Virus record (IMG/VR): IMGVR_UViG_3300042308_001511
Span: 248,001 to 312,000 of that record
Length of the DNA: 64,000 bases
Direction: 5' to 3' (one strand)
Positions 1,274 to 60,341 of the stretch are shown here, in pieces. The notes below the pieces were generated by a model, which did not search any database, was not told the origin of the DNA, and worked only from the letters and a program-made list of their open reading frames with translations. Numbering within the stretch: the stretch's first letter is position 1; the number at the start of each line of letters is the position of its first letter. Position numbers and translations under genes: made by a program.

Positions 1274-2224
1274 TCAAAGAACCTCTCTAGCAATCCTGAC
1301 GAAACCATCAACACGACCCATTGTGTAGTAGTGTAAACAAGGTGCTCCTCTCTTTATTAGATCCTTCGATTGTTCTACACACCAACGTTCGCCAAGCGTT
1401 CGTATTGCGGTATCGTCTTTACACAATAAAGCTTCTTTGTGTAAAGCCTCAGGTATGTCAATCGAGAAAACACGTGGAATCATCGAAATCTGTGCCTTAC
1501 TTGCTAATGGTTTCAAACCCGGTATAATTGGAACCGTAATACCTGCTACACGACACTTAGCAACAAAGTCGAAGTATTTATCATTGTCATAGAATAGTTG
1601 TGTCACTACATAGTCAGCACCTGCATCCACCTTTGCTTTCAACCAATCAATGTCACTTGTTGGATTCACCGCCTCTGCGTGTTTTTCAGGATAACCAGCA
1701 ACACCCATACAGAAGTTAGTAGAAACCCCATTCAAATCTTCTTCAAGATAAACACCTTTGTTCAAATCAGATACTTGTCTAACTAAATCAATCGCATGAG
1801 AATGACCACCCGGCTCCGCTGAAAATACCTTTTCATTCTTAGTAGGGTCTCCTCTCAATACTAACATATTTTCAATACCTAAATAATGAAGATCCAAAAG
1901 TGCATCCTCGGTCTCCTCTTTGGTAAAACCACCACAGATAATGTGTGGTACCGTATCGACACCATATTTATGTGTGATTGAAGAACATATTCCGACCGTC
2001 CCAGGACGTTTTCGAATATGTACTTTCTCTAACAAACCATTGTCTCTCTTTTTATAGATGAACTCCGCTCTGTGATAGGTCACATTTATGAAAGGTGGCT
2101 TGAACTCCATAAGTGGATCAAGTATATCGTATAAATCTACGATGTTACTACCTTTCAATGGTGGTAGTATTTCGAAACTTGCAAATGGTTTTTTCGCTTT
2201 AGCTATGTGTTCTGTTACCTTCAT
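1274..2224 (-). CDS. metF: 5,10-methylenetetrahydrofolate reductase
   Basis: SFEILPP, VPHIICGG, LVLRGD, AGYPEKH, KVDAGADYVVTQLF, IPIIPG, LHYYTM motifs; Bacteroidota-type HRAEFIYK..RKRPGTVGIC insert. Confidence 0.95.
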   Translation of the reverse strand: MKVTEHIAKAKKPFASFEILPPLKGSNIVDLYDILDPLMEFKPPFINVTYHRAEFIYKKRDNGLLEKVHIRKRPGTVGICSSITHKYGVDTVPHIICGGFTKEETEDALLDLHYLGIENMLVLRGDPTKNEKVFSAEPGGHSHAIDLVRQVSDLNKGVYLEEDLNGVSTNFCMGVAGYPEKHAEAVNPTSDIDWLKAKVDAGADYVVTQLFYDNDKYFDFVAKCRVAGITVPIIPGLKPLASKAQISMIPRVFSIDIPEALHKEALLCKDDTAIRTLGERWCVEQSKDLIKRGAPCLHYYTMGRVDGFVRIAREVL

Positions 2225-10031: not shown

Positions 10032-10061
10032 AAGGTTATATATAAAAAACTAAATTCCGAT

Positions 10062-10273
10062 TCATAATCCAAGCTCTTTCATCTTGATAATCTAAAGTGT
10101 TCTATTTCTATGTTATAAATTTCACATATACTCTCAGTTGACATCTTAGAAAAAAGTTCTGGTGTCAAACCATGCTTGAAATATCCATCTATGAACCAAT
10201 GACAGCGTTGTCTTGCCTCGTAAATCTGTGCATCAAGATCGAACGTACTTATTACTTTTTGTAGTGGTTTCAT
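10062..10273 (-). pseudogene. Hypothetical protein, C-tag split by an apparent 1-nt frameshift
   Basis: ORF ends HFRLSR* at 10079; the -1 frame continues MKELGL* to 10062. Confidence 0.55.
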
Positions 10274-14019: not shown

Positions 14020-14313
14020 TTATAATATTCCCAGGTCCCTAAGTTTTTTGTCTCTTTGCTCTTCCTTGCTGAGTTTGCACTGATACCAAGTCCCGTTTGT
14101 GTGTTTTTTTTCCTTCGTACCACACTTCGTACAGTATCTTGTTTTGAAGATTTGCTTTATGGGTTGTTTCGTGCCGATGTGAATACCGAGTTCTTCTACC
14201 TGTGAAGAGTACACCCAGTCGTGTCTGTGCGTCGCTGCTCGGTATATTTCCACCACGTTCACGATTGCGATGTAGATAGCACTGTTTCGTATGAGGTTCA
14301 TTATGTGTTTCAT
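14020..14313 (-). CDS. C-tag hypothetical protein with CxxC
   Basis: ends QRDKKLRDLGIL; RYCTKCG. Confidence 0.65.
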   Translation of the reverse strand: MKHIMNLIRNSAIYIAIVNVVEIYRAATHRHDWVYSSQVEELGIHIGTKQPIKQIFKTRYCTKCGTKEKKHTNGTWYQCKLSKEEQRDKKLRDLGIL

Positions 14314-14348
14314 ATTCCTAGTACATCGATTGTTTGTTCTTTTCTCAT
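14310..14348 (-). CDS. 12-aa minigene MRKEQTIDVLGI (C-tag only)
   Basis: ATG at 14348 overlaps the upstream TGA; its TGA overlaps the ATG at 14313. Confidence 0.55.
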   Translation of the reverse strand: MRKEQTIDVLGI

Positions 14349-14632
14349 ATTCCGAGATTTTTTAACGTTTCATCTCTCTTCCATGCCAATATTGTAGATT
14401 CGTCGGTATTGGCATAGTCTTCCCACCATTCGATTCCTCTCTTCGTCTCATTCCAGTTAAACGAGCGCGAAATGAAATCTTGGAAGTCATGACGCCACCA
14501 AGTAAAAAATGTTTCTAAACTTGTTCCCTGTTTCACATGATATGACCTATTGAATTCCTGTAGCCATTCCTCTTGCATATCTTTTGTCATCAGACTATGA
14601 TAATACGAACCTTGTTCCCTCTTTTTAATCAT
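14345..14632 (-). CDS. C-tag hypothetical protein
   Basis: ends KRDETLKNLGI. Confidence 0.65.
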   Translation of the reverse strand: MIKKREQGSYYHSLMTKDMQEEWLQEFNRSYHVKQGTSLETFFTWWRHDFQDFISRSFNWNETKRGIEWWEDYANTDESTILAWKRDETLKNLGI

Positions 14633-14853
14633 ATTCCAATCTCCTTAAGCCTTTCTTCTCTGTGCTCGTAAATGTGCTTGAAGTCCGATTTTTGTCGTAT
14701 CCTGTCTTTTTCGTCCTCGCAGGTGACGATGACGAGTTTTGGTCCTATCTCAAGGTCGGGGCAGTCCGTTGTCTCGTATGTCCTTCCGGTCTTCAGCAGC
14801 CAGTTGCCGTCAACGTCTATCAGGTCGTGCTTCGATATCATCGTCTCGTTCAT
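14629..14853 (-). CDS. C-tag small beta-barrel-like protein (paralog of 58063..58302)
   Basis: Start reassigned to coupled ATG (MNETMISKHD); shares ISKHD..DGxW..YETxDCP..GPKLVIVTCED; ends HREERLKEIGI. Confidence 0.7.
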   Translation of the reverse strand: MNETMISKHDLIDVDGNWLLKTGRTYETTDCPDLEIGPKLVIVTCEDEKDRIRQKSDFKHIYEHREERLKEIGI

Positions 14854-15131
14854 ATTCCCAGTTCTTTCATTCTTTCCTCGCGGTGCTCTACGATTACATC
14901 GTTCAGGTTCTTTAGGTATCTCCACCCGGTTATCGCGTAGTCATGTATTTCAGAATCATTTGTAAAAACATATACCCATATTATGTTTTTACTTCCGACG
15001 TTCAGGTTTTCAGAATTCTCGTGGATTTTTATACTCAACACTTTAGTGCCTTTACTTTCACCGTTCTCGTTGATTATCTGTTGAGCACTACGCATCAGTG
15101 CCTCCTTCTGAAAGTTATCCATGAGTTCCAT
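14850..15131 (-). CDS. C-tag hypothetical protein
   Basis: ends HREERMKELGI. Confidence 0.65.
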   Translation of the reverse strand: MELMDNFQKEALMRSAQQIINENGESKGTKVLSIKIHENSENLNVGSKNIIWVYVFTNDSEIHDYAITGWRYLKNLNDVIVEHREERMKELGI

Positions 15132-17449: not shown

Positions 17450-19174
17450 TTACATAAATTTCAAAGCACTCTCGAGACGTTTCATCTTCTCCATAGATTC
17501 CGACAAGTCTCCGTTCTTTTCCCACTCTTCCATTATCGCTACGGTGACGTTGTGATATGACATCGAAGACTTAAGGTTGAAATAGTCTGAAATCTTCCAT
17601 ATGTAGGTCGGTACTATCCTCTTATTGTCCTCAAGGTGATCCAACATCTTTATAGTTGCGGAGATTGTTGACAGCTGTTCGATTGTTTCGAACTTTTTGG
17701 AGAAGTAAGAGTTCTTGTAGTCACGGCTTATCCTTTCGAACTCCTTGTGAAGTTTCATAAACTCTACTACAAGTCTCTGATCTTTATCTTCCAATTGTTT
17801 CTTTATCTCTGTGATGTATTCGATGTACTCGGCGTTCTTCCTCTGATTGTTCGATATCATACTCTTAACTTTGTCTACGACCTGTCTCTCGTGATAGTCG
17901 GTGTCCTTTCCAGTCTCGACTGATTCGAGGTAATCATAGAGTTCGTTAATGAGTCTCTCAAATTCCCACCTGAATGTATCCTTCAACGAGAAGAGAAGGA
18001 AGTTGGTTCCGCCTAAAAGGTGTGGTGTTTTGTTGATCAGCTTACCGAGACCCTCTCTTAGGTTCAGGTCAGCTATCTTCTGTCTGTACCTCTCAAGGTT
18101 GGCTTTCCTTACACTGTCGTTGTCATTTAGTGCGACTGCTCCTGTCCTGGCTTCTTCCCTTTCCTTCTTGGTATCATCCGTGGATTTGAACTCACCTGCC
18201 TCAACGTCTGCAAAGTATTTGTCTGCGTCGAAAAGGATCACGTAGTCCGAATCCTTTATTTCGTCTTCATCGATTCCATGGGTTTGTTTTGAGATGCCGC
18301 CTCTGTATCCAGTACTGACTCTTAGGTTGTAGCCGTACGGCTCCTCGATTGGTTCGTTAGAGGTTATTTTGTAGAGCTCTATTTTGTAAGAACTCTCGTC
18401 GTTGTTAATTTTATTAAGTGATATGTGATGTATTCCCAGATCCTTCCATTTCGTTCCTGCTATACTCACACCCTGACCTCTGGTCTTCGTCGAACCGATA
18501 CCACTATTTATGAAGTGGTACTCACCGTTGTTATCTTTCCAGAATACACCAATCTTAACATCTGGGTGCCAAGACCTCCCATGCTTGAGTATAAGTCTGG
18601 TCTTACCAGGTACTATTTCGTTTTCTTCTATGAACTTCTCCTGTCCGGTTACAAAGTCAAACGCGTCGCCATTGGAAGGAAGTTTTATCCTCTCTGTCTC
18701 CCAGAATTTCGGACTTGATATCTCTCCGTAGTATTTACCGTCGGTGAAAGTGGTTCTCTTAAGTTCACCATCTTCACTCAACCAAAATTTGTAGAGTTTC
18801 TTATCACTTGCGTATTCAACGCCATCACCTTCACATTTCGTACATATTTTACTCGTAAATGATACCGCTTTCTTCGTGGTCGATGCGGTCTGGATATATC
18901 CATCACCGTTACACACAGGACATAATGTGTGCTCGTTACCACCGAGTCTGATTGTCCTCTGAGACTTTCTCTCGTATTTGAAGTATTTGTCACTCACCTC
19001 ACTCACAGGCATCTTACCAATTACCGTGGATGAAATATTCGTTGCCTCGACACAGATGGCTTTTATCGTGTCCAGTATTTCTCGTCTAGCATGTGATGTT
19101 ACGTTTCTGAGAGTCTTACCAAGTATTTTGGACTTGGTTGCCTCGAATATGTTGAATGCCTTTACGTGCTTCAT
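17450..19174 (-). CDS. N-tag large protein with DnaJ-like Zn-finger pair
   Basis: MKHVKAFNIFEA; CPVCNGDG..CTKCEGDG. Confidence 0.65.
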   Translation of the reverse strand: MKHVKAFNIFEATKSKILGKTLRNVTSHARREILDTIKAICVEATNISSTVIGKMPVSEVSDKYFKYERKSQRTIRLGGNEHTLCPVCNGDGYIQTASTTKKAVSFTSKICTKCEGDGVEYASDKKLYKFWLSEDGELKRTTFTDGKYYGEISSPKFWETERIKLPSNGDAFDFVTGQEKFIEENEIVPGKTRLILKHGRSWHPDVKIGVFWKDNNGEYHFINSGIGSTKTRGQGVSIAGTKWKDLGIHHISLNKINNDESSYKIELYKITSNEPIEEPYGYNLRVSTGYRGGISKQTHGIDEDEIKDSDYVILFDADKYFADVEAGEFKSTDDTKKEREEARTGAVALNDNDSVRKANLERYRQKIADLNLREGLGKLINKTPHLLGGTNFLLFSLKDTFRWEFERLINELYDYLESVETGKDTDYHERQVVDKVKSMISNNQRKNAEYIEYITEIKKQLEDKDQRLVVEFMKLHKEFERISRDYKNSYFSKKFETIEQLSTISATIKMLDHLEDNKRIVPTYIWKISDYFNLKSSMSYHNVTVAIMEEWEKNGDLSESMEKMKRLESALKFM

Positions 19175-33515: not shown

Positions 33516-34805
33516 TTAGTTTTTTATGGCTTTCAGTGATATTGTTTGTCTGTCCTTTGTTATGTTCAGAAAATAAGTCCCTGGTTGCAGCATCTGTGTA
33601 TCGATTGAGATTGTGCCTCCGTCGAATACCTGGATTGTTTTCCCTTCGATGGTTGTAAATGTACCGTATGATCCAGGTGTCAAGCTAATCTCTATCCTAT
33701 CGTTGAAAGGGTTCGGCCAGAACAACTCTTTAAGTTGTTGTTCACGTAAAGATAAGCTAGATGAGTCTTTTAGTCCTGTATTGTCCCACAAACACTTCAC
33801 CGAGTCGAACTGGTAGACGTAGATAGTGTCTGTAGGCTGTACCGGTTTTGTGCCTTTGTTCTCCCATACGAGTGTTTTGATGTTGAACTGGTGGTTGTCC
33901 CAACAGGTTGTATCTGCAGGCCTGGTCGGTATTGCTCTTACAGAGTCCAGCCAGAAATATCCTGCGTACGGGTGGTACATCTGACATACGGGAGTATTAT
34001 CGTTACAATCAGATAGGAACTTACCAGATACTATAATACTATCGAGGTGAACGATTCCTGCGACCTGTGCTGCTGCGTAGTTACAGATCTTATACTGAGT
34101 GTTGTCGTAGCTGATATAGTAGCCTGAGCAGTCTGTAAAGCCGAGTGCTACGTAGTTGGTGATTGGTCCTGGTTCTGTACCTGGTACAATCATTATAGGA
34201 ACACCGGTTGGTTTGTATTCTTTGTTATTGGTTCCAACAACGGAACAACCGTTAGCGTCGGTGAATACGACGTATAGTTTAGGATTGTATAGGTTCATAA
34301 AGCAACCACCTTGGTTTGGACCGTAGTATTGGGTGAATGTGTTGTCCCAGTTCTTTGTGTATACTTTATCAATCATAGCATAGTTAGCTTTATCGACTGA
34401 AAAGTAAATACAGGTTTGTTGGTTTTGAGGGTTCTGTGGATCTGGCATCTGTATAACATTGAAGGAAGTGACCTTCAGTGAGTCACAGTCTTTAGTGACA
34501 GCGATAGAGATGTTTATTAGTGTGTCCAACGAGAATTTGGCTAAGCCGTCATCTTTCTTCTTACCGAGTACCCAGTAGGTGCCTGGTACGAGTTCGCCTT
34601 TTGTTTTAAAGTTTGTGGCCAGTTCGGATCCCTGTATTGCAGCGTCTACGACTCTATAGATTGACCACTTTTTAATGTTTGTTCCTGTGGTGTCGACTGA
34701 TACGGCACCATCATTGAAGTTTGGTCCAGTAGCGTTTGTGACCTTTACTTGTGAGTTTGCTAGGAATGCTAGCATAAATGAGATTGTAGCTATTAGTTTT
34801 TTCAT
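33516..34805 (-). CDS. Secreted protein with T9SS type A C-terminal sorting domain
   Basis: Signal peptide; C-term FWPNPFNDRIEI..TIEGKTI..IDTQMLQPGTYFLNI..LKAIKN. Confidence 0.8.
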   Translation of the reverse strand: MKKLIATISFMLAFLANSQVKVTNATGPNFNDGAVSVDTTGTNIKKWSIYRVVDAAIQGSELATNFKTKGELVPGTYWVLGKKKDDGLAKFSLDTLINISIAVTKDCDSLKVTSFNVIQMPDPQNPQNQQTCIYFSVDKANYAMIDKVYTKNWDNTFTQYYGPNQGGCFMNLYNPKLYVVFTDANGCSVVGTNNKEYKPTGVPIMIVPGTEPGPITNYVALGFTDCSGYYISYDNTQYKICNYAAAQVAGIVHLDSIIVSGKFLSDCNDNTPVCQMYHPYAGYFWLDSVRAIPTRPADTTCWDNHQFNIKTLVWENKGTKPVQPTDTIYVYQFDSVKCLWDNTGLKDSSSLSLREQQLKELFWPNPFNDRIEISLTPGSYGTFTTIEGKTIQVFDGGTISIDTQMLQPGTYFLNITKDRQTISLKAIKN

Positions 34806-40519: not shown

Positions 40520-40725
40520 CTATGAAGTGATTCAACCGTTATACTTCCATCTTCATGCTTGGTGAACTTATCTCCTTTCGACGGTAGGTGCATTTTACCG
40601 TTGGCTAATCGTATGAATGATCCTACGGTATCACAACCATCTCTTTCTTCTCTTATGCAGTTCCCTTCGAAGAACTTCTGAGCTTCTCGCCCCATCCATC
40701 CTTCATATACTAATTCTTCTTTCAT
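40516..40725 (-). CDS. Hypothetical protein
   Basis: Start at coupled ATG (MKEELVYEG). Confidence 0.55.
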   Translation of the reverse strand: MKEELVYEGWMGREAQKFFEGNCIREERDGCDTVGSFIRLANGKMHLPSKGDKFTKHEDGSITVESLHR

Positions 40726-40979
40726 CTTATTCCCAGTTCTTTTAGTTTGTCTTCTCTTAGTATTACAAGGTACTCGTCGATTGGGTACCACCAAGCAGAA
40801 GTGCCATTGTCTACGTTTTTATTTCCGAATTCTATTTTGAAGGTGCCATTATCGTGGTCTATTTCTACAATGGTTCCATCGACGCCTATGAGGTTGTACA
40901 TAGGTGTTGTCATCGCAACAAATAAGGCTCGCCTCTGTTCTGCGAATTCGAACCCTTTCACTCTGTCTCCTATCTTCAT
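40722..40979 (-). CDS. C-tag KGFxF-family small beta-barrel protein
   Basis: KIGDRVKGFEF..GVDG..WYP; ends LREDKLKELGIR. Confidence 0.7.
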   Translation of the reverse strand: MKIGDRVKGFEFAEQRRALFVAMTTPMYNLIGVDGTIVEIDHDNGTFKIEFGNKNVDNGTSAWWYPIDEYLVILREDKLKELGIR

Positions 40980-41203
40980 ATTCCAAGTTGTTTCAGTTTC
41001 TCTTCTCTGTACTCGTCGGGCTCCAGGAATTGTAGGTGTCTGTTGTGAACGACCAGCTCGTACTCGGTCCCGTCGACGGTGAAGAAGACTAAGGTATAGT
41101 ATTTGTTCGAGAATTCCGACTTGTAGAGACCACCACAGATGAGCGGCTCGTAACTGTAGTCCTTCAGCGTCGCGTCGTCCGATATGACCTTTACGTATTT
41201 CAT
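40976..41203 (-). CDS. C-tag hypothetical protein
   Basis: ends YREEKLKQLGI. Confidence 0.65.
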   Translation of the reverse strand: MKYVKVISDDATLKDYSYEPLICGGLYKSEFSNKYYTLVFFTVDGTEYELVVHNRHLQFLEPDEYREEKLKQLGI

Positions 41204-41430
41204 ATCCCTAGTTCTTTTAGTCTCCGTTCCCTTTGTATCGCCAGGTACTCCTTGATTGGGTAGGACCAGTAGCCGACTCCGTCGTAGAATATGCTGAATG
41301 TGTCGGTCCCCACGTCGCTTACGACGCCTTCTACACCCACGAAACGGTTCATACCTCTATTGTAGTTAAGGATTGCCGAGTTATTGAATGCGGGGAATTT
41401 GAATCCTTTCGCTATGTCTCCTATCTTCAT
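41200..41430 (-). CDS. C-tag KGFxF-family protein
   Basis: KIGDIAKGFKF..GVEG..WSYP; ends QRERRLKELGI. Confidence 0.7.
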   Translation of the reverse strand: MKIGDIAKGFKFPAFNNSAILNYNRGMNRFVGVEGVVSDVGTDTFSIFYDGVGYWSYPIKEYLAIQRERRLKELGI

Positions 41431-41705
41431 ATCCCAAGTTCTTTAAGTTTTTCTTCTCTCTGCAATACCAGGTATTCGTCCAGAGGATAGATCCAGTGCT
41501 GCATGTTTGGTTCTGCTGGCATTACGCGAAATGTATCTACGTGTATGGGTGTACCGATAAAGCCTATGACCAGCTCGTTCATTTTCGGCCTGACCTGCCT
41601 CGCGATACCTTCCACGCCCACGAACTGTTCCATTAGGTCGTTCCAGTGAACCCCACTCGAGTTTTCGAACCGGAATCCTTTTGCCTTGTCTCCACGCTTA
41701 ATCAT
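41427..41705 (-). CDS. C-tag KGFxF-family protein
   Basis: MIKRGDKAKGFRF..GVEG..WIYP; ends QREEKLKELGI. Confidence 0.7.
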   Translation of the reverse strand: MIKRGDKAKGFRFENSSGVHWNDLMEQFVGVEGIARQVRPKMNELVIGFIGTPIHVDTFRVMPAEPNMQHWIYPLDEYLVLQREEKLKELGI

Positions 41706-41712
41706 CTTTCTA

Positions 41713-41958
41713 TCAAAAATGGTCTGGATCATAAAAGTCTCTATCTATGAATATAAGATCAGAGACCGGTATTGTTTTATAACCATCATCGAATGTTTTA
41801 TTGTTTAGAATAAATGCTGTGCCGAAGTCAAACGAATAATCTGAATTTTGAACGCAGCATATCTTATAGGTATTATCATTGTAATTGTATGATACTTTGA
41901 CAATATCACCTTCTAATACTTCTATGGCAGTGTCTTTGTATTTGAGCTTTATTTTCAT
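41713..41958 (-). CDS. Hypothetical protein
   Basis: 81-aa ORF. Confidence 0.5.
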   Translation of the reverse strand: MKIKLKYKDTAIEVLEGDIVKVSYNYNDNTYKICCVQNSDYSFDFGTAFILNNKTFDDGYKTIPVSDLIFIDRDFYDPDHF

Positions 41959-42020
41959 GGCAGTTTATGTATTAAAATTTTATTTGATCTCGACTTATCT
42001 CGCTCAGAGCAATGCCACAA

Positions 42021-42362
42021 TCATATTCCTATTTCTTTTAGTTTTTCTTCTCTATCTCTTCTTAATATCTCATTATCAAAAGGTATCCAATTTTCATCAA
42101 AGCTATACTTATAGATTTTCTTATTATCTTGCCAAATAAGATAAGAAGAAAACTTAACTACATTACCAAGATAGTCTACTCCTGTAAAAGCTTCTTTGTG
42201 TATGCTTTTTCCAAAACCCACTTTTTGAGTTTCTATATCCCTGATTATTTTTAATAAATCTTCAAAATCAATATCTCGCTCTATAATTTCTTCGCCAGTA
42301 GTTGATATATACTCACCGGGCTTTAAAAACTTTATTTTAAGTATTTTCTCTATTTCCATCAT
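42021..42362 (-). CDS. C-tag hypothetical protein
   Basis: ends DREEKLKEIGI. Confidence 0.65.
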   Translation of the reverse strand: MMEIEKILKIKFLKPGEYISTTGEEIIERDIDFEDLLKIIRDIETQKVGFGKSIHKEAFTGVDYLGNVVKFSSYLIWQDNKKIYKYSFDENWIPFDNEILRRDREEKLKEIGI

Positions 42363-42637
42363 ATCCCTAATTCTTTTATTCTTTCTTCTCTATACCATGA
42401 CACCGGCATGAAGTAGGGATCGAACCAGGGTTCGATCCCAGGCGTGACCACAAGGTTCTCGTCGACCCACTGCTCTATCCAGTTACAGGTTAGACCATCG
42501 TCGGATTTGAGCTTGTAGATCCATTGTCCAAATGAGTCGAGCGCTCGGTCAGTTATCTCGTATGTCTTTCCCAGGACGAGGGTGTTATAGTTTTCCTCAC
42601 CTTTCGTGCATATTACTCGTTCTCCTATTTCTAACAT
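42359..42637 (-). CDS. C-tag SH3-like protein (LxxGKxYE family)
   Basis: VICT..LVLGKTYEI; ends YREERIKELGI. Confidence 0.7.
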   Translation of the reverse strand: MLEIGERVICTKGEENYNTLVLGKTYEITDRALDSFGQWIYKLKSDDGLTCNWIEQWVDENLVVTPGIEPWFDPYFMPVSWYREERIKELGI

Positions 42638-43331: not shown

Positions 43332-43634
43332 TTATATGCCGAGTTCGTTTATTCTTTCATGTCTTGTAATCTCTATGTAGTCAGCGATTGGGTAGGTCCA
43401 ATAATCATAATTTTGAAAATGAAGCAGATCAGACAAATTCCTGAGGTTCATGAACTTTACTACAAATGTCTCCTCCTTTACCTCAGCAACTTCACCCTCT
43501 TCACCAACGTAGAGATCCATGCTGGGGTGGTAGTTCAGCCCGGTCGTTTTGTCTATTGAAAAGGTGGTCTCAGATCCGTCACCTATTTTCTCTCCGAACT
43601 TGAACCCCTTTACTTTGTCTCCTACTTTTATCAT
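43332..43634 (-). CDS. C-tag KGFxF-family protein
   Basis: MIKVGDKVKGFKF..GEEG..WTYP; ends RHERINELGI. Confidence 0.7.
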   Translation of the reverse strand: MIKVGDKVKGFKFGEKIGDGSETTFSIDKTTGLNYHPSMDLYVGEEGEVAEVKEETFVVKFMNLRNLSDLLHFQNYDYWTYPIADYIEITRHERINELGI

Positions 43635-49677: not shown

Positions 49678-50031
49678 TTATTCGAGAACCAGGTCAATCT
49701 TCAACTCTCTAATCTCTTCGTCTGTTAGAGCTCCTATTTGTGCCACTCGGTCTAATATAATCTTTTCTAAATCAGTGGCCAAGCGTACTTCACGGTCGTA
49801 CACAGAGACTCTTTTTCCACTCAAATAAGGATAGGTGTTTTGACCGTCTTTTCTGAGGAACTCATTACTGGACTTCCGCCACATATGGTTCATATTACTG
49901 AAGGTCAATCCAAATACTAACGCGTTGGCAAAATCATCGTTCTGTGTGGTGTAAGGTCGTATAAGGCACCAGCTACCATCGTGTTCGTCGGTGATGAGGT
50001 ATGTCTCGTCTTTTATGAATGTTCTTTTCAT
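49678..50031 (-). CDS. C-tag hypothetical protein (paralog of 56217..56553)
   Basis: ends IRELKIDLVLE. Confidence 0.65.
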   Translation of the reverse strand: MKRTFIKDETYLITDEHDGSWCLIRPYTTQNDDFANALVFGLTFSNMNHMWRKSSNEFLRKDGQNTYPYLSGKRVSVYDREVRLATDLEKIILDRVAQIGALTDEEIRELKIDLVLE

Positions 50032-50324
50032 ACACCCAGTTCTTTAAGTCTTTCTTCTCTTATATGTTGTAAGTATTCCGCGAGAGGATAAATTACGCCC
50101 CAACTGTTAGACCACGATGTATTGGCTTCGTTGCTGTAGTCTCTATCCCATTCTCTAGGAAATCGAACTTCGAATCTCGGTCCGACGCCGTGTGGTCCTT
50201 CAGATATCTTTTTAACAATTCCTTCGACACCGATGAATCGTTCCTTAGATTCGGTCCAATCTAGGTTTGCCGAGTTTAGTTCGTGGAATCTGAATCCTTT
50301 TACTTTACTGCCTTTCTCTATCAC
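50028..50324 (-). CDS. C-tag KGFxF-family protein
   Basis: GTG start after tandem promoters at 50333-50349; KVKGFRF..GVEG..IYP; ends IREERLKELGV. Confidence 0.65.
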   Translation of the reverse strand: MIEKGSKVKGFRFHELNSANLDWTESKERFIGVEGIVKKISEGPHGVGPRFEVRFPREWDRDYSNEANTSWSNSWGVIYPLAEYLQHIREERLKELGV

Positions 50325-50353
50325 TTTTTTTACAAATATAACAAATATAAGAA

Positions 50354-50548
50354 TCATTCTGTAACCTTTATTATGTCGTTCGAAAAATAATCGCTAACTT
50401 TTTCTTCCTCTCCATATGGTCTGAAGTAAAGAAGACCGTCTCTTTTGTAGATCCTGTGTTGACCCGCTTGTTGTACATCTACCAGGTCTCCATCCGCGAG
50501 TTCGTTGTCGAACTTGTCTATACATTTTATTTTCATGTTGTCTCTCAT
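50354..50548 (-). CDS. Hypothetical protein
   Basis: 64-aa ORF. Confidence 0.5.
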   Translation of the reverse strand: MRDNMKIKCIDKFDNELADGDLVDVQQAGQHRIYKRDGLLYFRPYGEEEKVSDYFSNDIIKVTE

Positions 50549-53221: not shown

Positions 53222-53469
53222 TGTATTTCTAATTTGTTCAATTGTCTTTCTCTCCACTCTTTTTGTGTGTAAAATCTTTCTTCAATATCACCGCCGACCC
53301 AATGTGGAATACCATCTCCGTTTGTATTTTTTATGATGCTACCTGGCCCGTCTACGAAAGTAATTTCATACATATCACCTGGTATGAAATGGTATTCATA
53401 AGACCCTCCGGTTTTACCATATAGTGCGGTATAGGGTTTATTAACATAGATTATATCTCCTACTTTCAT
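53218..53469 (-). CDS. C-tag SH3-like protein
   Basis: ends WRERQLNKLEIQ. Confidence 0.65.
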   Translation of the reverse strand: MKVGDIIYVNKPYTALYGKTGGSYEYHFIPGDMYEITFVDGPGSIIKNTNGDGIPHWVGGDIEERFYTQKEWRERQLNKLEIQ

Positions 53470-53807
53470 ATTCCTAGTTCTATTAGTCTCTGTTCTCGTA
53501 TCTCACGGAGATACTCTTTTATAGGATAGCACCATTTCCTTGGCGGCACTTCCTCTAAACGATAATCTCCTTCATTCGAACTTGATAATACTAATCTTTC
53601 AATTTCCTCATCAGGAAGGATTTCGAATTGTATGGTTATGTAGTTTTCATTCGGTGTTCTGGATTCGTATACTATTTCTACTATTGATCCCTCGCGACCG
53701 ATGTATTTCTCCATACGTTGATCCCAGTACATATTCGAAGAGTTTTTCTTATTTGTGAACCTGAACCCTTTTGCTTTTTGTCCTAACTCTAGTGTACCTA
53801 CTTTCAT
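53466..53807 (-). CDS. C-tag KGFxF-family protein
   Basis: GQKAKGFRF..GREG..WCYP; ends IREQRLIELGI. Confidence 0.7.
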   Translation of the reverse strand: MKVGTLELGQKAKGFRFTNKKNSSNMYWDQRMEKYIGREGSIVEIVYESRTPNENYITIQFEILPDEEIERLVLSSSNEGDYRLEEVPPRKWCYPIKEYLREIREQRLIELGI

Positions 53808-58062: not shown

Positions 58063-58302
58063 TTAGATTCCGAGTGAATCGATCCTCTGTTCTCTGTATT
58101 CTGCCATATCCATAAAGTCTGACCTGCGGCGGACCCTGTATTGACCGTCTTCACAGGTGACGATGACAAGTTTTGGTCCTAGCTCACCAGTTGGTGTGTA
58201 CGTTGAAGGGCAGTCTGATGTCTCGTAAGCCTTTCTAGCTTTCATTAACCATACTCCGTTACCATCCTTCCAATCGTGTTTGGATATCATTATATCGTTC
58301 AT
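58063..58302 (-). CDS. C-tag protein (paralog of 14629..14853)
   Basis: ends YREQRIDSLGI. Confidence 0.7.
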   Translation of the reverse strand: MNDIMISKHDWKDGNGVWLMKARKAYETSDCPSTYTPTGELGPKLVIVTCEDGQYRVRRRSDFMDMAEYREQRIDSLGI

Positions 58303-58514
58303 ATTCCTAGTTTTTCCAGTACGAGTTGTCTTTTTTCCACAGTTGATATGAATAGTTCTCTATCGTATATTGCATAGTCGGTTTCGCCGTTTCCCCAGTA
58401 TATTGCGTAGTAGTTTACTCTATCCACCGCATCGTACCATTCGCCAATCTTTATGTCGGTGTGATAGCCGGATCTGTTTGATACACACTGAACTTTTATC
58501 CTCTGTCGTTTCAT
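58299..58514 (-). CDS. C-tag SH3-like protein
   Basis: VQCVSN..IGEWYDA; ends KRQLVLEKLGI. Confidence 0.65.
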   Translation of the reverse strand: MKRQRIKVQCVSNRSGYHTDIKIGEWYDAVDRVNYYAIYWGNGETDYAIYDRELFISTVEKRQLVLEKLGI

Positions 58515-58777
58515 ATTCCGAGTTCTTTTATCTTTTGGTCTCTTAGTCGTATTTTGTATTCGTCGAGATTTATGGTGATGTCTTTTTTATAGGTGAAATG
58601 TTTCTTCATACCTTGTACGTTCTTTATGATAGTAAAGTAATAGTTCACCATTAGTAAGTCTTCGGTAAAGTCTAATTGTATTTCGTAGATTTTATCGATG
58701 ACTATTTTATCTCTTTCTATCGTAGGCTCTTTTTCGGTTATAAAGTCCTTTATCAGTTCGTTGTCGTATTCGATCAT
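58511..58777 (-). CDS. C-tag hypothetical protein
   Basis: ends LRDQKIKELGI. Confidence 0.65.
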   Translation of the reverse strand: MIEYDNELIKDFITEKEPTIERDKIVIDKIYEIQLDFTEDLLMVNYYFTIIKNVQGMKKHFTYKKDITINLDEYKIRLRDQKIKELGI

Positions 58778-59028
58778 TCTATTCCTAGTTCATCGAGTTT
58801 TCTGTCTCTTTGTCTCTGTGCCTCGCTGAGGTTGATTAGTCGGCCTCTTGTGTGTGAATTTGGGCTGTGGAAGTTTTTGTTGTGACTCGACGTCCACGGT
58901 ATGTCGAGCTCGCTGGACCAAATCCATATTCTATCGTACGTGAAGTTCTTGTCGTCGAGTTCCTCTATCGTGAACGTCTTTTCTGGCTGTGTTTCCCAGT
59001 ACACGAGGTCTCCTACCTGGTAGTTCAT
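58774..59028 (-). CDS. C-tag SH3-like protein
   Basis: YQVGDLVYW; ends QRDRKLDELGIE; TATATTCG at 59088-59095. Confidence 0.65.
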   Translation of the reverse strand: MNYQVGDLVYWETQPEKTFTIEELDDKNFTYDRIWIWSSELDIPWTSSHNKNFHSPNSHTRGRLINLSEAQRQRDRKLDELGIE

Positions 59029-59168: not shown

Positions 59169-60341
59169 ATGGCAACATTTACCACATCAAAAACTTCTGG
59201 AAGTATATATGTATCTGTTAATACAACAACGGGTTATTGGATGAGTTTCCATAATGGAAGTTATAATGGAAATTCAAACACCCCACAGATATATAGTGAT
59301 TCTGGTACCTTCAATTATTGGGGTAAAAGATTGGATGTAATTGCAACAAATGGTGAATTTACAATTGTCGCGTGTGATGTTAATGGAAACATTGGTGGTG
59401 ATATAACTTTGTTGAATTTATATTCTAGTTCTGATATAATTGCGTTTGACGGAACTGGTTTGACCGCTTTGACTAAATTGAGTATAGAGGGTGCATCGAA
59501 TATTAGAGGTCAGCTAACATCTTTTGATGCGACTGGTATGACTTCATTGAATTGGTTATACTTAAGGAGTAATTTACTAACAAATATAAACGTAACTGGT
59601 TTAGTAAATCTAACTAAGTTAGTGTTGGATGGTAATCAATTAACTTGGGGAGGTATAAGTGGTTTAAATACTTTGAGTAGTTTAACTTGGTTAAACTTAA
59701 ATGGTAACTTATTAACTACATTTGATGGTTCAGGTTTGAGCTCGTTATTACAACTTGATTTGTTCTACAATCAGGTAACAACATCTGGAATAACTAATTT
59801 ACCAAATACATTGGTTAAATTGAATTTACGTTATAATAGACTTACATCATTTGATGCTACTAGTTTAGTAAACTTAACTGAACTTAGTTTACAGATGAAT
59901 CAAATAACATCTGTAAATTTATCTGGCCTAACAAAATTGATTTTACTTAATTTATCTGATAATTTATTGACAGATATAAATGTTTCTGGATTGACTAGTT
60001 TGAAATATATAAATCTTACTGGTAATCGTTTATCTACAATGGATGTAAGTGGTCTAACTAATTTAGTTGATTTGAGATTATGGCGTAATTCGTCTATAAC
60101 ACCTAGTGTTAACAATCAGATATTACAACAATTGGATCAAAATGGTGCTATTGGTGATACTTCTACTAGTAAGGGTTACTTTCCAGCAAATGGTGTTTTT
60201 TGGTCTAATAATGGTAGAACTTCTGTTAGTAATGTAAGTTTCAATAATTTGACGAATAAAAATTGGGAATTTGATGGTTTGGATTTGATTGCGAGTCCAA
60301 CTCGTCAGTTATCGGGCACTAAGGACAGAAAAAACTTATAA
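59169..60341 (+). CDS. Leucine-rich repeat (internalin-like) protein
   Basis: About 10 repeats of LTxLxLxxNxLTxxDxSG; TAATATATAA at 59138-59147. Confidence 0.85.
   Translation: MATFTTSKTSGSIYVSVNTTTGYWMSFHNGSYNGNSNTPQIYSDSGTFNYWGKRLDVIATNGEFTIVACDVNGNIGGDITLLNLYSSSDIIAFDGTGLTALTKLSIEGASNIRGQLTSFDATGMTSLNWLYLRSNLLTNINVTGLVNLTKLVLDGNQLTWGGISGLNTLSSLTWLNLNGNLLTTFDGSGLSSLLQLDLFYNQVTTSGITNLPNTLVKLNLRYNRLTSFDATSLVNLTELSLQMNQITSVNLSGLTKLILLNLSDNLLTDINVSGLTSLKYINLTGNRLSTMDVSGLTNLVDLRLWRNSSITPSVNNQILQQLDQNGAIGDTSTSKGYFPANGVFWSNNGRTSVSNVSFNNLTNKNWEFDGLDLIASPTRQLSGTKDRKNL

What the first reader, a model, noticed from the sequence alone, without database searches (positions are those of the whole stretch)
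14310..14348. A tag-only minigene (MRKEQTIDVLGI) translationally coupled at both ends
Seen: a 39-nt ORF below the ORF-track cut-off that consists essentially of the C-tag (compare REQRIDSLGI at 58063). Its ATG overlaps the upstream TGA and its TGA overlaps the next ATG (ATGA twice). Inference: either the scar of a gene body excised by recombination between tags, showing the tag is a separable module, or a free peptide that competes for the tag's receptor.
Basis: partly seen in the sequence, partly recalled or inferred. Interest (0 to 1): 0.62.

Follow-up and report, generated by a model that had tools for sequence, protein, structure and literature searches.

The report
Deletion scar of a phage gene
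The 12-codon "tag-only minigene" is what is left of a 90-105-residue accessory gene of a freshwater huge phage after an in-frame deletion removed its body: ordinary gene decay, not a purpose-built peptide.

Summary
The ORF is real. It lies on the minus strand at window 14348->14310, encodes MRKEQTIDVLGI*, and has ATGA stop/start overlaps at both ends. It is not a "tag-only" gene. In at least seven near-identical metagenomic relatives the same slot, between the same 95-aa and 94-97-aa genes, holds a full-length gene of 90-105 aa (MRKEQTID[VG]LKVGD...FEK[LI]GI*) under purifying selection (dN/dS 0.18-0.31). Against the L016 allele the mini-ORF is an exact join of codons 1-10 to the last two codons plus stop, across a 4-nt direct repeat (ACTA), with 255 bp lost in frame. 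Ten of its twelve codons are therefore the old N-terminus, and only G-I-stop certainly comes from the tag. It lacks the invariant Arg and scores 4.9 bits on a tag matrix, against 15.5-35.4 for 75 real tags. The scar sits on a mosaic breakpoint: 98-99 % identity to one haplotype on its left, 79 % to that haplotype and 91.5 % to another on its right. Contigs from two other samples of a second study carry it. A true tag-end-to-tag-end excision of the same gene also exists in one sample and leaves no mini-ORF. Translation of the scar, as a relay that keeps the downstream gene coupled, is inferred and untested. The tag system itself is the interesting part: about 76 ORFs here, and it also occurs in 634-642-kb phages.

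The parts
14310..14348 (-). 12-codon remnant ORF MRKEQTIDVLGI* (the finding)
   Evidence: Read directly. Identical to the 5' 30 nt plus the 3' 9 nt of the 97-aa gene L016:270-563.
14319..14348 (-). Retained 5' end (codons 1-10, MRKEQTIDVL) of the deleted P0013-family gene
   Evidence: 30/30 nt identical to L016:270-299 and 29/30 to L008:3285-3314.
14319..14322 (-). Deletion junction: the 4-nt microhomology ACTA, present at both breakpoints in the intact allele
   Evidence: L016 reads 5' ...GAT GTA CTA|AAA GTA GGA and 3' ...GAA AAA CTA|GGA ATA TGA; the window reads GAT GTA CTA GGA ATA TGA.
14310..14318 (-). Retained 3' end (GGA ATA TGA = G-I-stop) of the deleted gene's tag, including the ATG of the next gene; also the point where the run-X2 variant contig diverges
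14345..14632 (-). Upstream tagged gene, 95 aa (ends RDETLKNLGI); its TGA overlaps the remnant's ATG
   Evidence: 98-99 % nt identity to the L008/L009/L016 haplotype.
14020..14313 (-). Downstream tagged gene, 97 aa (MKHIMNLIRNS..., ends RDKKLRDLGIL); its ATG overlaps the remnant's TGA
   Evidence: 79 % nt identity to L008/L016 but 91.5 % to L018, so the mosaic breakpoint is at the scar.
14629..14853 (-). Tagged gene (74 aa from ATG; MNETMISKHD...REERLKEIGI), part of the same coupled array
14850..15131 (-). Tagged gene, 93 aa (...EHREERMKELGI). Its homologue directly precedes the P0013-family gene in L017/L018, and directly precedes the 97-aa gene in the X2 variant.

Best explanation
The mini-ORF is a deletion scar, the head and tail of a dispensable accessory gene. 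SHOWN: related freshwater huge-phage haplotypes carry a 90-, 97- or 105-aa tagged gene (P0013/P0014/P0015) in this slot, ATGA-coupled to both neighbours and under purifying selection. The window haplotype joins codon 10 of that gene to its last two codons across a 4-nt direct repeat (ACTA). This removes 255 bp (85 codons) relative to the L016 allele, or 234 bp relative to L008, in frame and with no other change. The joint coincides with a switch of haplotype, L016/L008-like upstream and L018-like downstream. INFERRED: the event was an illegitimate, microhomology-mediated recombination. It was either an unequal exchange between two co-infecting haplotypes, or ordinary homologous exchange followed by replication slippage. 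INFERRED: because the deletion kept the frame, the original architecture survives (stop of gene A overlapping a start, 12 codons, a stop overlapping the start of gene C). Ribosomes leaving the 95-aa gene can therefore still be handed on to the 97-aa gene by termination-reinitiation. On this reading the remnant matters, if at all, as a passive translational relay, and its 12-residue product has no function of its own.
For: The 95-aa neighbour has homologues at 65-99 % identity. In L008-L013 and L016 it is followed by the full-length gene and then by the homologue of the 97-aa gene. The DNA alignment shows a single clean gap and an exact junction with ACTA at both breakpoints. The full-length gene exists in three diverged alleles and two syntenic contexts with dN/dS 0.18-0.31. 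More distant relatives have other full-length tagged genes in the slot and never a mini-ORF. Mosaic: 98-99 % identity to L008/L016 on the left, 79 % to L008/L016 and 91.5 % to L018 on the right. The deleted form is spanned without a gap by contigs from runs X2 (602 nt, 1 difference) and X3 (1151 nt, 8 differences). These are two further samples from a second study, so it is not an assembly artefact. The tag matrix gives 4.9 bits against at least 15.5 for real tags, and Arg is invariant in 75 of 75 real tags. ATGA overlaps are the norm in these arrays, at 41 of 75 tags.
Against: There is no expression evidence of any kind. No RNA run holds the locus, so translation of the remnant and its relay role are untested. 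An in-frame outcome has a 1-in-3 prior, so by itself it is weak evidence of selection. The true right-hand parent has not been sampled (best match 91.5 %), so a one-step unequal exchange cannot be told apart from two steps. The resulting peptide is more tag-like than 99 % of artificial 'N-terminus + GI' chimeras.
Confidence: 0.9

Rival explanations
1. The remnant is a functional free 'tag' peptide that binds the unknown tag receptor and competes with the roughly 75 tagged proteins.
For: It ends in L-G-I-COOH and, in the tag register, has K-E-x-x-I-x-x-L-G-I. Only 0.9 % of artificial chimeras made of the first 10 residues of other ORFs plus GI score as high. It keeps start and stop contexts that should allow translation. 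It persists in three samples.
Against: It has Lys where Arg is invariant (75 of 75), Thr where 58 of 75 tags have Lys or Arg, and Val at a position that is mostly Glu, Lys or Asp. It scores 4.9 bits against a minimum of 15.5 for real tags. Its tag-like residues descend from the N-terminus of the lost gene and are present there in the intact alleles, so they were not selected for tag function. No receptor is known, and the phage encodes no PDZ or S41 domain.
Confidence: 0.04
2. The scar arose by recombination between the tags of two neighbouring genes, excising the body between them.
For: Tag ends share short repeats: GGAATATGA is common, and shared exact 3' suffixes between tag pairs reach a 95th percentile of 9 nt and a maximum of 16 nt. 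Such an excision of this very gene exists in run X2.
Against: Tag-to-tag exchange leaves one hybrid tag on the upstream gene and no free-standing ORF, exactly as in the X2 variant. Here the 5' 30 nt are identical to the start of the deleted gene itself, and the upstream gene's own tag (RDETLKNLGI) is intact.
Confidence: 0.03
3. The mini-ORF is ancestral, and the 90-105-aa gene was inserted into it in the relatives.
For: The slot is hyperplastic, and different genes occupy it in different relatives.
Against: This needs an in-frame insertion exactly between codons 10 and 11 of a 12-codon ORF that has no reason to pre-exist. The full-length gene occurs in three alleles of 72-100 % identity, in two different contexts, under purifying selection. 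Its MRKEQ start and FEK[LI]GI end are integral parts of it in all alleles, including L017/L018, where the upstream neighbour is a different gene.
Confidence: 0.02
4. It is an assembly artefact or a chance ORF.
For: Metagenome-assembled genome; repeats at gene ends could mislead an assembler.
Against: Contigs from two other samples of a second study span the junction with 0 gaps. The retained segments match the intact gene base for base.
Confidence: 0.01

Closest known systems
Gene remnants left by microhomology-mediated (illegitimate) deletion in the accessory-gene arrays of large phages (general phenomenon; my own knowledge)
   Same: A short direct repeat (4 nt) at both breakpoints, a clean loss of the body of a non-essential ORFan, retained ends, and location in a variable array of small genes.
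   Different: Here the deletion is in frame and keeps both stop/start overlaps, so the remnant is still a complete, potentially translated ORF rather than an untranslated fragment. It also coincides with a haplotype switch.
PeSL-mediated modular shuffling in hyperplastic regions of T4-type phages (Arbiol et al. 2010, PMC2839356; Comeau et al. 2014, PMC4122927)
   Same: ORFan cassettes in hyperplastic regions are gained and lost by recombination between short conserved sequences at gene boundaries. The X2 variant at this locus (precise loss of one gene between two GGAATATGA tag ends) is the analogous event.
   Different: PeSLs are intergenic promoter-plus-terminator cassettes of about 100 bp. 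Here the genes overlap by 4 nt, there is no intergenic spacer, and there is no excess of promoter- or terminator-like sites. The shared boundary is coding (tag end plus start codon) and only about 9 nt long. The mini-ORF itself did not arise at the boundaries.
Translational coupling by overlapping stop/start codons (ATGA/TGATG), termination-reinitiation in bacterial and phage operons (established knowledge, e.g. trp operon gene pairs)
   Same: The remnant has an ATGA overlap at both ends, as 41 of 75 tagged genes in this genome have at their 3' end.
   Different: A 12-codon ORF serving only as a relay between two coupled genes is an inference here and has not been shown.
Phage lambda bar minigenes and other two-to-few-codon minigenes (my own knowledge)
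   Same: A very short translated ORF in a phage genome.
   Different: Bar minigenes act through peptidyl-tRNA drop-off from 2-codon ORFs. Nothing suggests that here, and this ORF is explained by descent.

Membership tests
C-tag-bearing proteins of this phage clade | Invariant Arg at position -9 from the C-terminus | tested here: not met
   75 of 75 real tags have Arg; the mini-ORF has Lys there, with Arg one residue earlier.
C-tag-bearing proteins of this phage clade | Hydrophobic residues at -5 and -2, Gly at -1, and Ile/Val/Leu at the C-terminus | tested here: met
   I, L, G, I. By descent, I(-5) comes from the old N-terminus and L(-2) lies in the junction repeat; only G and I certainly come from a tag.
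C-tag-bearing proteins of this phage clade | Overall match to the tag profile (real tags 15.5-35.4 bits) | tested here: not met
   4.9 bits.
C-tag-bearing proteins of this phage clade | The tag is appended to a protein body | tested here: not met
   There is no body: 12 residues in all.
Deletion remnant of the P0013/P0014/P0015 gene family | Same syntenic slot between the same flanking genes | tested here: met
   95-aa gene, slot, then the MK[HY]I[LM]xLIRNSAIY gene in L008-L013, L016 and the window.
Deletion remnant of the P0013/P0014/P0015 gene family | Retained ends are base-for-base homologous to the intact gene, with a single gap between them | tested here: met
   30/30 and 9/9 nt identical to L016, with one 255-bp gap.
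Deletion remnant of the P0013/P0014/P0015 gene family | The intact form is a real gene, older than the remnant | tested here: met
   Three alleles of 72-100 % aa identity in two contexts, dN/dS 0.18-0.31. Polarity is inferred by parsimony, not by a rooted tree.
PeSL-type boundary cassettes (T4-type phages) | An intergenic promoter plus stem-loop terminator of about 100 bp at the cassette boundaries | tested here: not met
   The genes overlap by 4 nt. Promoter-like sites: 4, against 3.1 +/- 1.4 in shuffles; terminator-like sites: 0.
Translationally coupled relay ORF | Start overlaps the upstream stop, and stop overlaps the downstream start | tested here: met
   ATGA at 14345-14348 and at 14310-14313.
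Translationally coupled relay ORF | Ribosome occupancy, and dependence of the downstream gene on it | not testable with these tools
   No RNA run holds the locus; the phage is uncultured.

The most novel reading that the evidence does not exclude
By accident of descent the scar encodes a free peptide (K-E-x-x-I-x-x-L-G-I-COOH) that is still recognised by whatever reads the clade-wide C-terminal tag. It would then be a natural tag-only competitor, or a handle for finding the tag's receptor.
Probability: 0.04. Interest if true: 0.6.

Novelty: new member of a known kind. Interest (0 to 1): 0.22.

Why it matters
In itself it matters little. It is a well-resolved example of how accessory genes are lost from the small-gene arrays of huge phages, with one microhomology deletion and one boundary-repeat excision of the same gene caught in natural populations. 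It is useful in two ways. First, the mini-ORF should not be used as evidence about the tag, neither for its separability nor as a competitor. Second, the locus shows two distinct routes of cassette loss, only one of which uses the tag-end/ATGA repeat. That bears on how these arrays turn over. The truly open and interesting question lies next to the finding: what is the function of a 10-residue C-terminal tag carried by about 76 unrelated proteins in this genome and shared with 634-642-kb phages?

Tried and rejected
Megablast of 4.1 kb around the locus against the phage collection gave no match. tblastn of the 95-aa protein against phages gave no match. IMG/VR scans with the 95-aa, 97-aa and 455-aa proteins found no relatives. 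Pfam and PHROGs searches on the flanking genes, the ancestral 97-aa gene and other tagged genes found nothing except DUF7448. A literature search for the tag string returned only noise, and the jumbo-phage comparative paper does not mention such a tag. I considered a PDZ-type or tail-specific-protease receptor, because -L-G-I-COOH resembles a class II PDZ ligand; the phage has no PDZ_2, PDZ_6 or Peptidase_S41 match, so no receptor candidate emerged and a host receptor remains possible. AlphaFold models of the ancestral 97-aa protein (pLDDT 54) and the 95-aa neighbour (pLDDT 63) were too poor for fold searches. The tag region of the latter is modelled as the end of a C-terminal helix at low confidence. 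I tried to confirm the second ghost tag (genome 327910-327942) through a relative; the only one found (L021, 68 % identity) has a different full-length gene upstream, so ancestry is suggested by the aligned junction but not proven. The idea that the tag is a by-product of a conserved DNA element (a Shine-Dalgarno sequence or a recombination site) is rejected. All synonymous codons and all three stop codons are used, the mean shared 3' suffix between tag pairs is 3.3 nt, and the GGA lies only 2 nt from the ATG.

Full report
OBSERVATION. The window is G000:C1:248001-312000 of a single 344,083-bp virus contig (36.6 % GC, CheckV completeness 91 %). On the minus strand, 14348->14310 reads ATGAGAAAAGAACAAACAATCGATGTACTAGGAATATGA = MRKEQTIDVLGI*. 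Its ATG overlaps the TGA of a 95-aa gene (14345-14632, ends RDETLKNLGI). Its TGA overlaps the ATG of a 97-aa gene (14020-14313, ends RDKKLRDLGIL). So the sequence-level observation is correct, on the minus strand.

THE TAG IS REAL. About 31 ORFs in the window and 75-76 in the genome end in R-[EDN]-x-[KR]-[LI]-x-x-[LI]-G-[IVL]-stop. Of the 33 occurrences of the motif in all six frames of the window, nearly all are C-terminal. All synonymous codons for Arg, Leu, Gly and Ile are used, and so are TGA, TAA and TAG. Pairs of tags share on average only 3.3 nt of exact 3' suffix (95th percentile 9, maximum 16). Conservation is therefore at the peptide level. The tag sits on at least 56 BLAST-unrelated bodies, including membrane proteins, and it lies outside a complete DUF7448 domain (profile positions 2-103 of 104). 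The same pattern occurs 25 and 36 times in LR745206.1 (634,780 bp) and LR756502.1 (642,428 bp), against 0-1 for a reversed control. These sizes match the 634- and 642-kb genomes of Al-Shayeb et al. 2020. That paper places its largest genomes in the Mahaphage clade and predicts Bacteroidetes hosts for those above 634 kb (PMC7162821). The identification rests on size only. A T9SS sorting-domain protein in the window (33516-34805) also points to a Bacteroidota host. The phage occurs in lake and river metagenomes from 13 studies.

WHAT THE MINI-ORF IS. The 95-aa neighbour has homologues at 65-99 % identity, and I fetched their contigs. In the nearest relatives (L008-L013, 99 %) the slot holds a 90-aa gene, MRKEQTIDGLKVGDTLMF...CPREVAFEKIGI*. 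It is ATGA-coupled on both sides and is followed by the homologue of the 97-aa gene. A DNA alignment shows the window to be these relatives minus one block of 234 bp. The family has three alleles: P0013 (90 aa), P0014 (97 aa, L016) and P0015 (105 aa, L017/L018). With L016 the fit is exact. Its 5' end is ATG AGA AAA GAA CAA ACA ATC GAT GTA CTA|AAA GTA GGA..., and its 3' end is ...TTC GAA AAA CTA|GGA ATA TGA. The window is the join of the two across the shared ACTA, with 255 bp (85 codons) lost in frame and no substitution. Hence MRKEQTIDV(L) is the old N-terminus and only (L)GI-stop is tag-derived. The full-length gene is under purifying selection (dN/dS 0.18-0.31) and occurs in two different syntenic contexts, so it is the older state. 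More distant relatives carry other full-length tagged genes (72/78, 101, 169 aa) in this slot and never a mini-ORF.

MOSAIC AND POPULATION DATA. Left of the scar the window is 98-99 % identical to L008/L009/L016. Right of it, the 97-aa gene is only 79-83 % identical to those loci but 91.5 % identical to L018. The switch is visible within a few bases of the joint (GAAACAC in the window and L018, GAAATAC in L016). The scar is therefore also a haplotype joint. This fits one unequal, microhomology-guided exchange between two phages, or a homologous exchange followed by slippage; the data cannot separate the two. Contigs of run X2 (602 nt, 1 difference, no gap) and X3 (1151 nt, 8 differences, no gap) span the scar. 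X2 and X3 are different samples from a different study than the probable source, X1. X2 also has a contig whose sequence is the L018-type tail ...TEHRDERMKEL followed by GGAATATGA and then the 97-aa gene. That is the L018 arrangement minus the entire 105-aa gene (318 bp), joined inside the 9-nt repeat GGAATATGA that ends both tags. The same dispensable gene has thus been lost twice, by two routes.

IS THE PEPTIDE A TAG? On a matrix built from 75 real tags the mini peptide scores 4.9 bits; real tags score 15.5-35.4 (median 27.9). It has Lys for the invariant Arg, Thr at the mostly basic -6 position and Val at -3. It is nevertheless more tag-like than 99.1 % of artificial 'first ten residues + GI' chimeras. 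I read this as coincidence combined with ascertainment, since that resemblance is why it was flagged. The ancestral gene's own tag (REAAFEKLGI) is itself atypical, at 4-6 bits. No phage-encoded PDZ or S41 domain exists to serve as an obvious C-terminus reader.

HOW IT MOST LIKELY WORKS. Shown: its origin by deletion. Inferred: the in-frame outcome preserves the chain stop/start, 12 codons, stop/start, so ribosomes finishing the 95-aa gene can reinitiate twice and reach the 97-aa gene. ATGA overlaps are the rule in these arrays (41 of 75 tags), and five other doubly coupled ORFs of 2-9 codons exist by a crude criterion. There is no intergenic space and no excess of promoter- or terminator-like sites here. 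No RNA data exist. An in-frame result has a prior of one in three, so selection for it is plausible but not demonstrated.

COMPARISON WITH WHAT IS KNOWN. The closest described system for cassette turnover is PeSL-mediated modular shuffling in T4-type phages (PMC2839356; PMC4122927). The X2 excision works like it, except that its boundary repeat is a 9-nt coding sequence rather than an intergenic regulatory cassette of about 100 bp. The mini-ORF itself is simply a microhomology deletion remnant. S-PM2 'ORFanage' loss was attributed to mispackaging, a different mechanism (PMC4503421).

OTHER SCARS. Genome 327910-327942(-) holds KLKEIGI* plus an ATGA overlap with the next gene. It lies one base out of frame behind a gene ending ...DDLGIN*. 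In relative L021 the homologous junction is the end of a full 92-aa gene (REDRLKELGI*-ATGA-MRWINE). Genome 335840-335878(-) reads WKRQNALDGIGI* in frame just after the stop of a tagged gene, but about two such matches are expected by chance genome-wide. Window 10062-10091(-) holds ...KMKELGL*, which shares 15 nt with the tail of the MDSFQ-family gene.

VERDICT. The label 'tag-only minigene' is wrong by descent. 'Scar of an excised gene' is right, but the excision was not between tags, and the competitor-peptide idea is unsupported. The finding itself is of low interest. The neighbouring tag system deserves its own study.

Noticed in passing
Whole genome G000 (e.g. window 40722-42637, 58063-59028; genome 326001-329566); also LR745206.1 and LR756502.1: A 10-residue C-terminal tag, R-[EDN]-x-[KR]-[LI]-x-x-[LI]-G-[IVL]-COOH, sits on 75-76 ORFs with at least 56 unrelated bodies, and is conserved as peptide rather than as DNA. 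It lies outside a complete DUF7448 domain. It also occurs 25 and 36 times in two huge phages of 634 and 642 kb (control 0-1). Function and receptor are unknown, and I found no description of it in the literature searches I ran.
   Followed up: partly
window 14318 / 14893 (run X2 variant contig): A population variant in which the L018-type 96-aa gene tail (...TEHRDERMKELGI*) is coupled directly to the 97-aa gene. The whole P0015-like gene (318 bp) is missing and the joint lies inside the 9-nt repeat GGAATATGA shared by the two tag ends: a clean boundary-repeat cassette excision or insertion.
   Followed up: yes
genome 327910-327942 (-) = L019:1910-1942: A ghost half-tag, KLKEIGI*, with an ATGA overlap to the next gene (MRWINE...), one base out of frame behind a gene ending ...RGKVLDDLGIN*. 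It looks like another deletion that kept only the 3' part of a tag and the downstream start context. Relative L021 has a full 92-aa tagged gene at that junction.
   Followed up: partly
genome 335840-335878 (-) = L020:1840-1878: WKRQNALDGIGI* lies in frame directly after the TGA of a tagged gene (ends REERLINLGIE*) and overlaps the start of the next gene in another frame. It could be a remnant, a readthrough extension or chance; about two such motif hits are expected genome-wide.
   Followed up: no
window 10050-10091 (-): A short fragment, ...IIKMKELGL*, followed by IGI*. Its DNA shares 15 identical bases (ATGAAAGAGCTTGGA) with the tail of the MDSFQ-family tagged gene, so it may be another tag remnant in a gene boundary.
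   Followed up: no
window 14020-15131 versus L008/L016/L017/L018: At least four arrangements of this small-gene array coexist in freshwater populations. The slot after the 95-aa gene holds unrelated tagged genes (72/78, 90-105, 101, 169 aa) in different relatives: a hyperplastic array with no intergenic spacers.
   Followed up: partly
window 17450-19174 (-); 33516-34805 (-); 1274-2224 (-); 59169-60341 (+): A 574-aa protein with a DnaJ-type CXXCXGXG zinc-finger region, shared at 24 % identity with the 634- and 642-kb phages; a protein with a T9SS C-terminal sorting domain (a hint of a Bacteroidota host); a methylenetetrahydrofolate reductase; and a leucine-rich-repeat protein.
   Followed up: no
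window 40722-41732, 43332-43634, 50028-50357, 53466-53807 (-): A paralogous family of six tagged genes that start M-K-[IV]-G-D...KGF[KR]F and end EYL-x-x-R-E-x-[KR]-L-K-E-L-G-I. It shows that part of the tag's abundance comes from local gene duplication.
   Followed up: no
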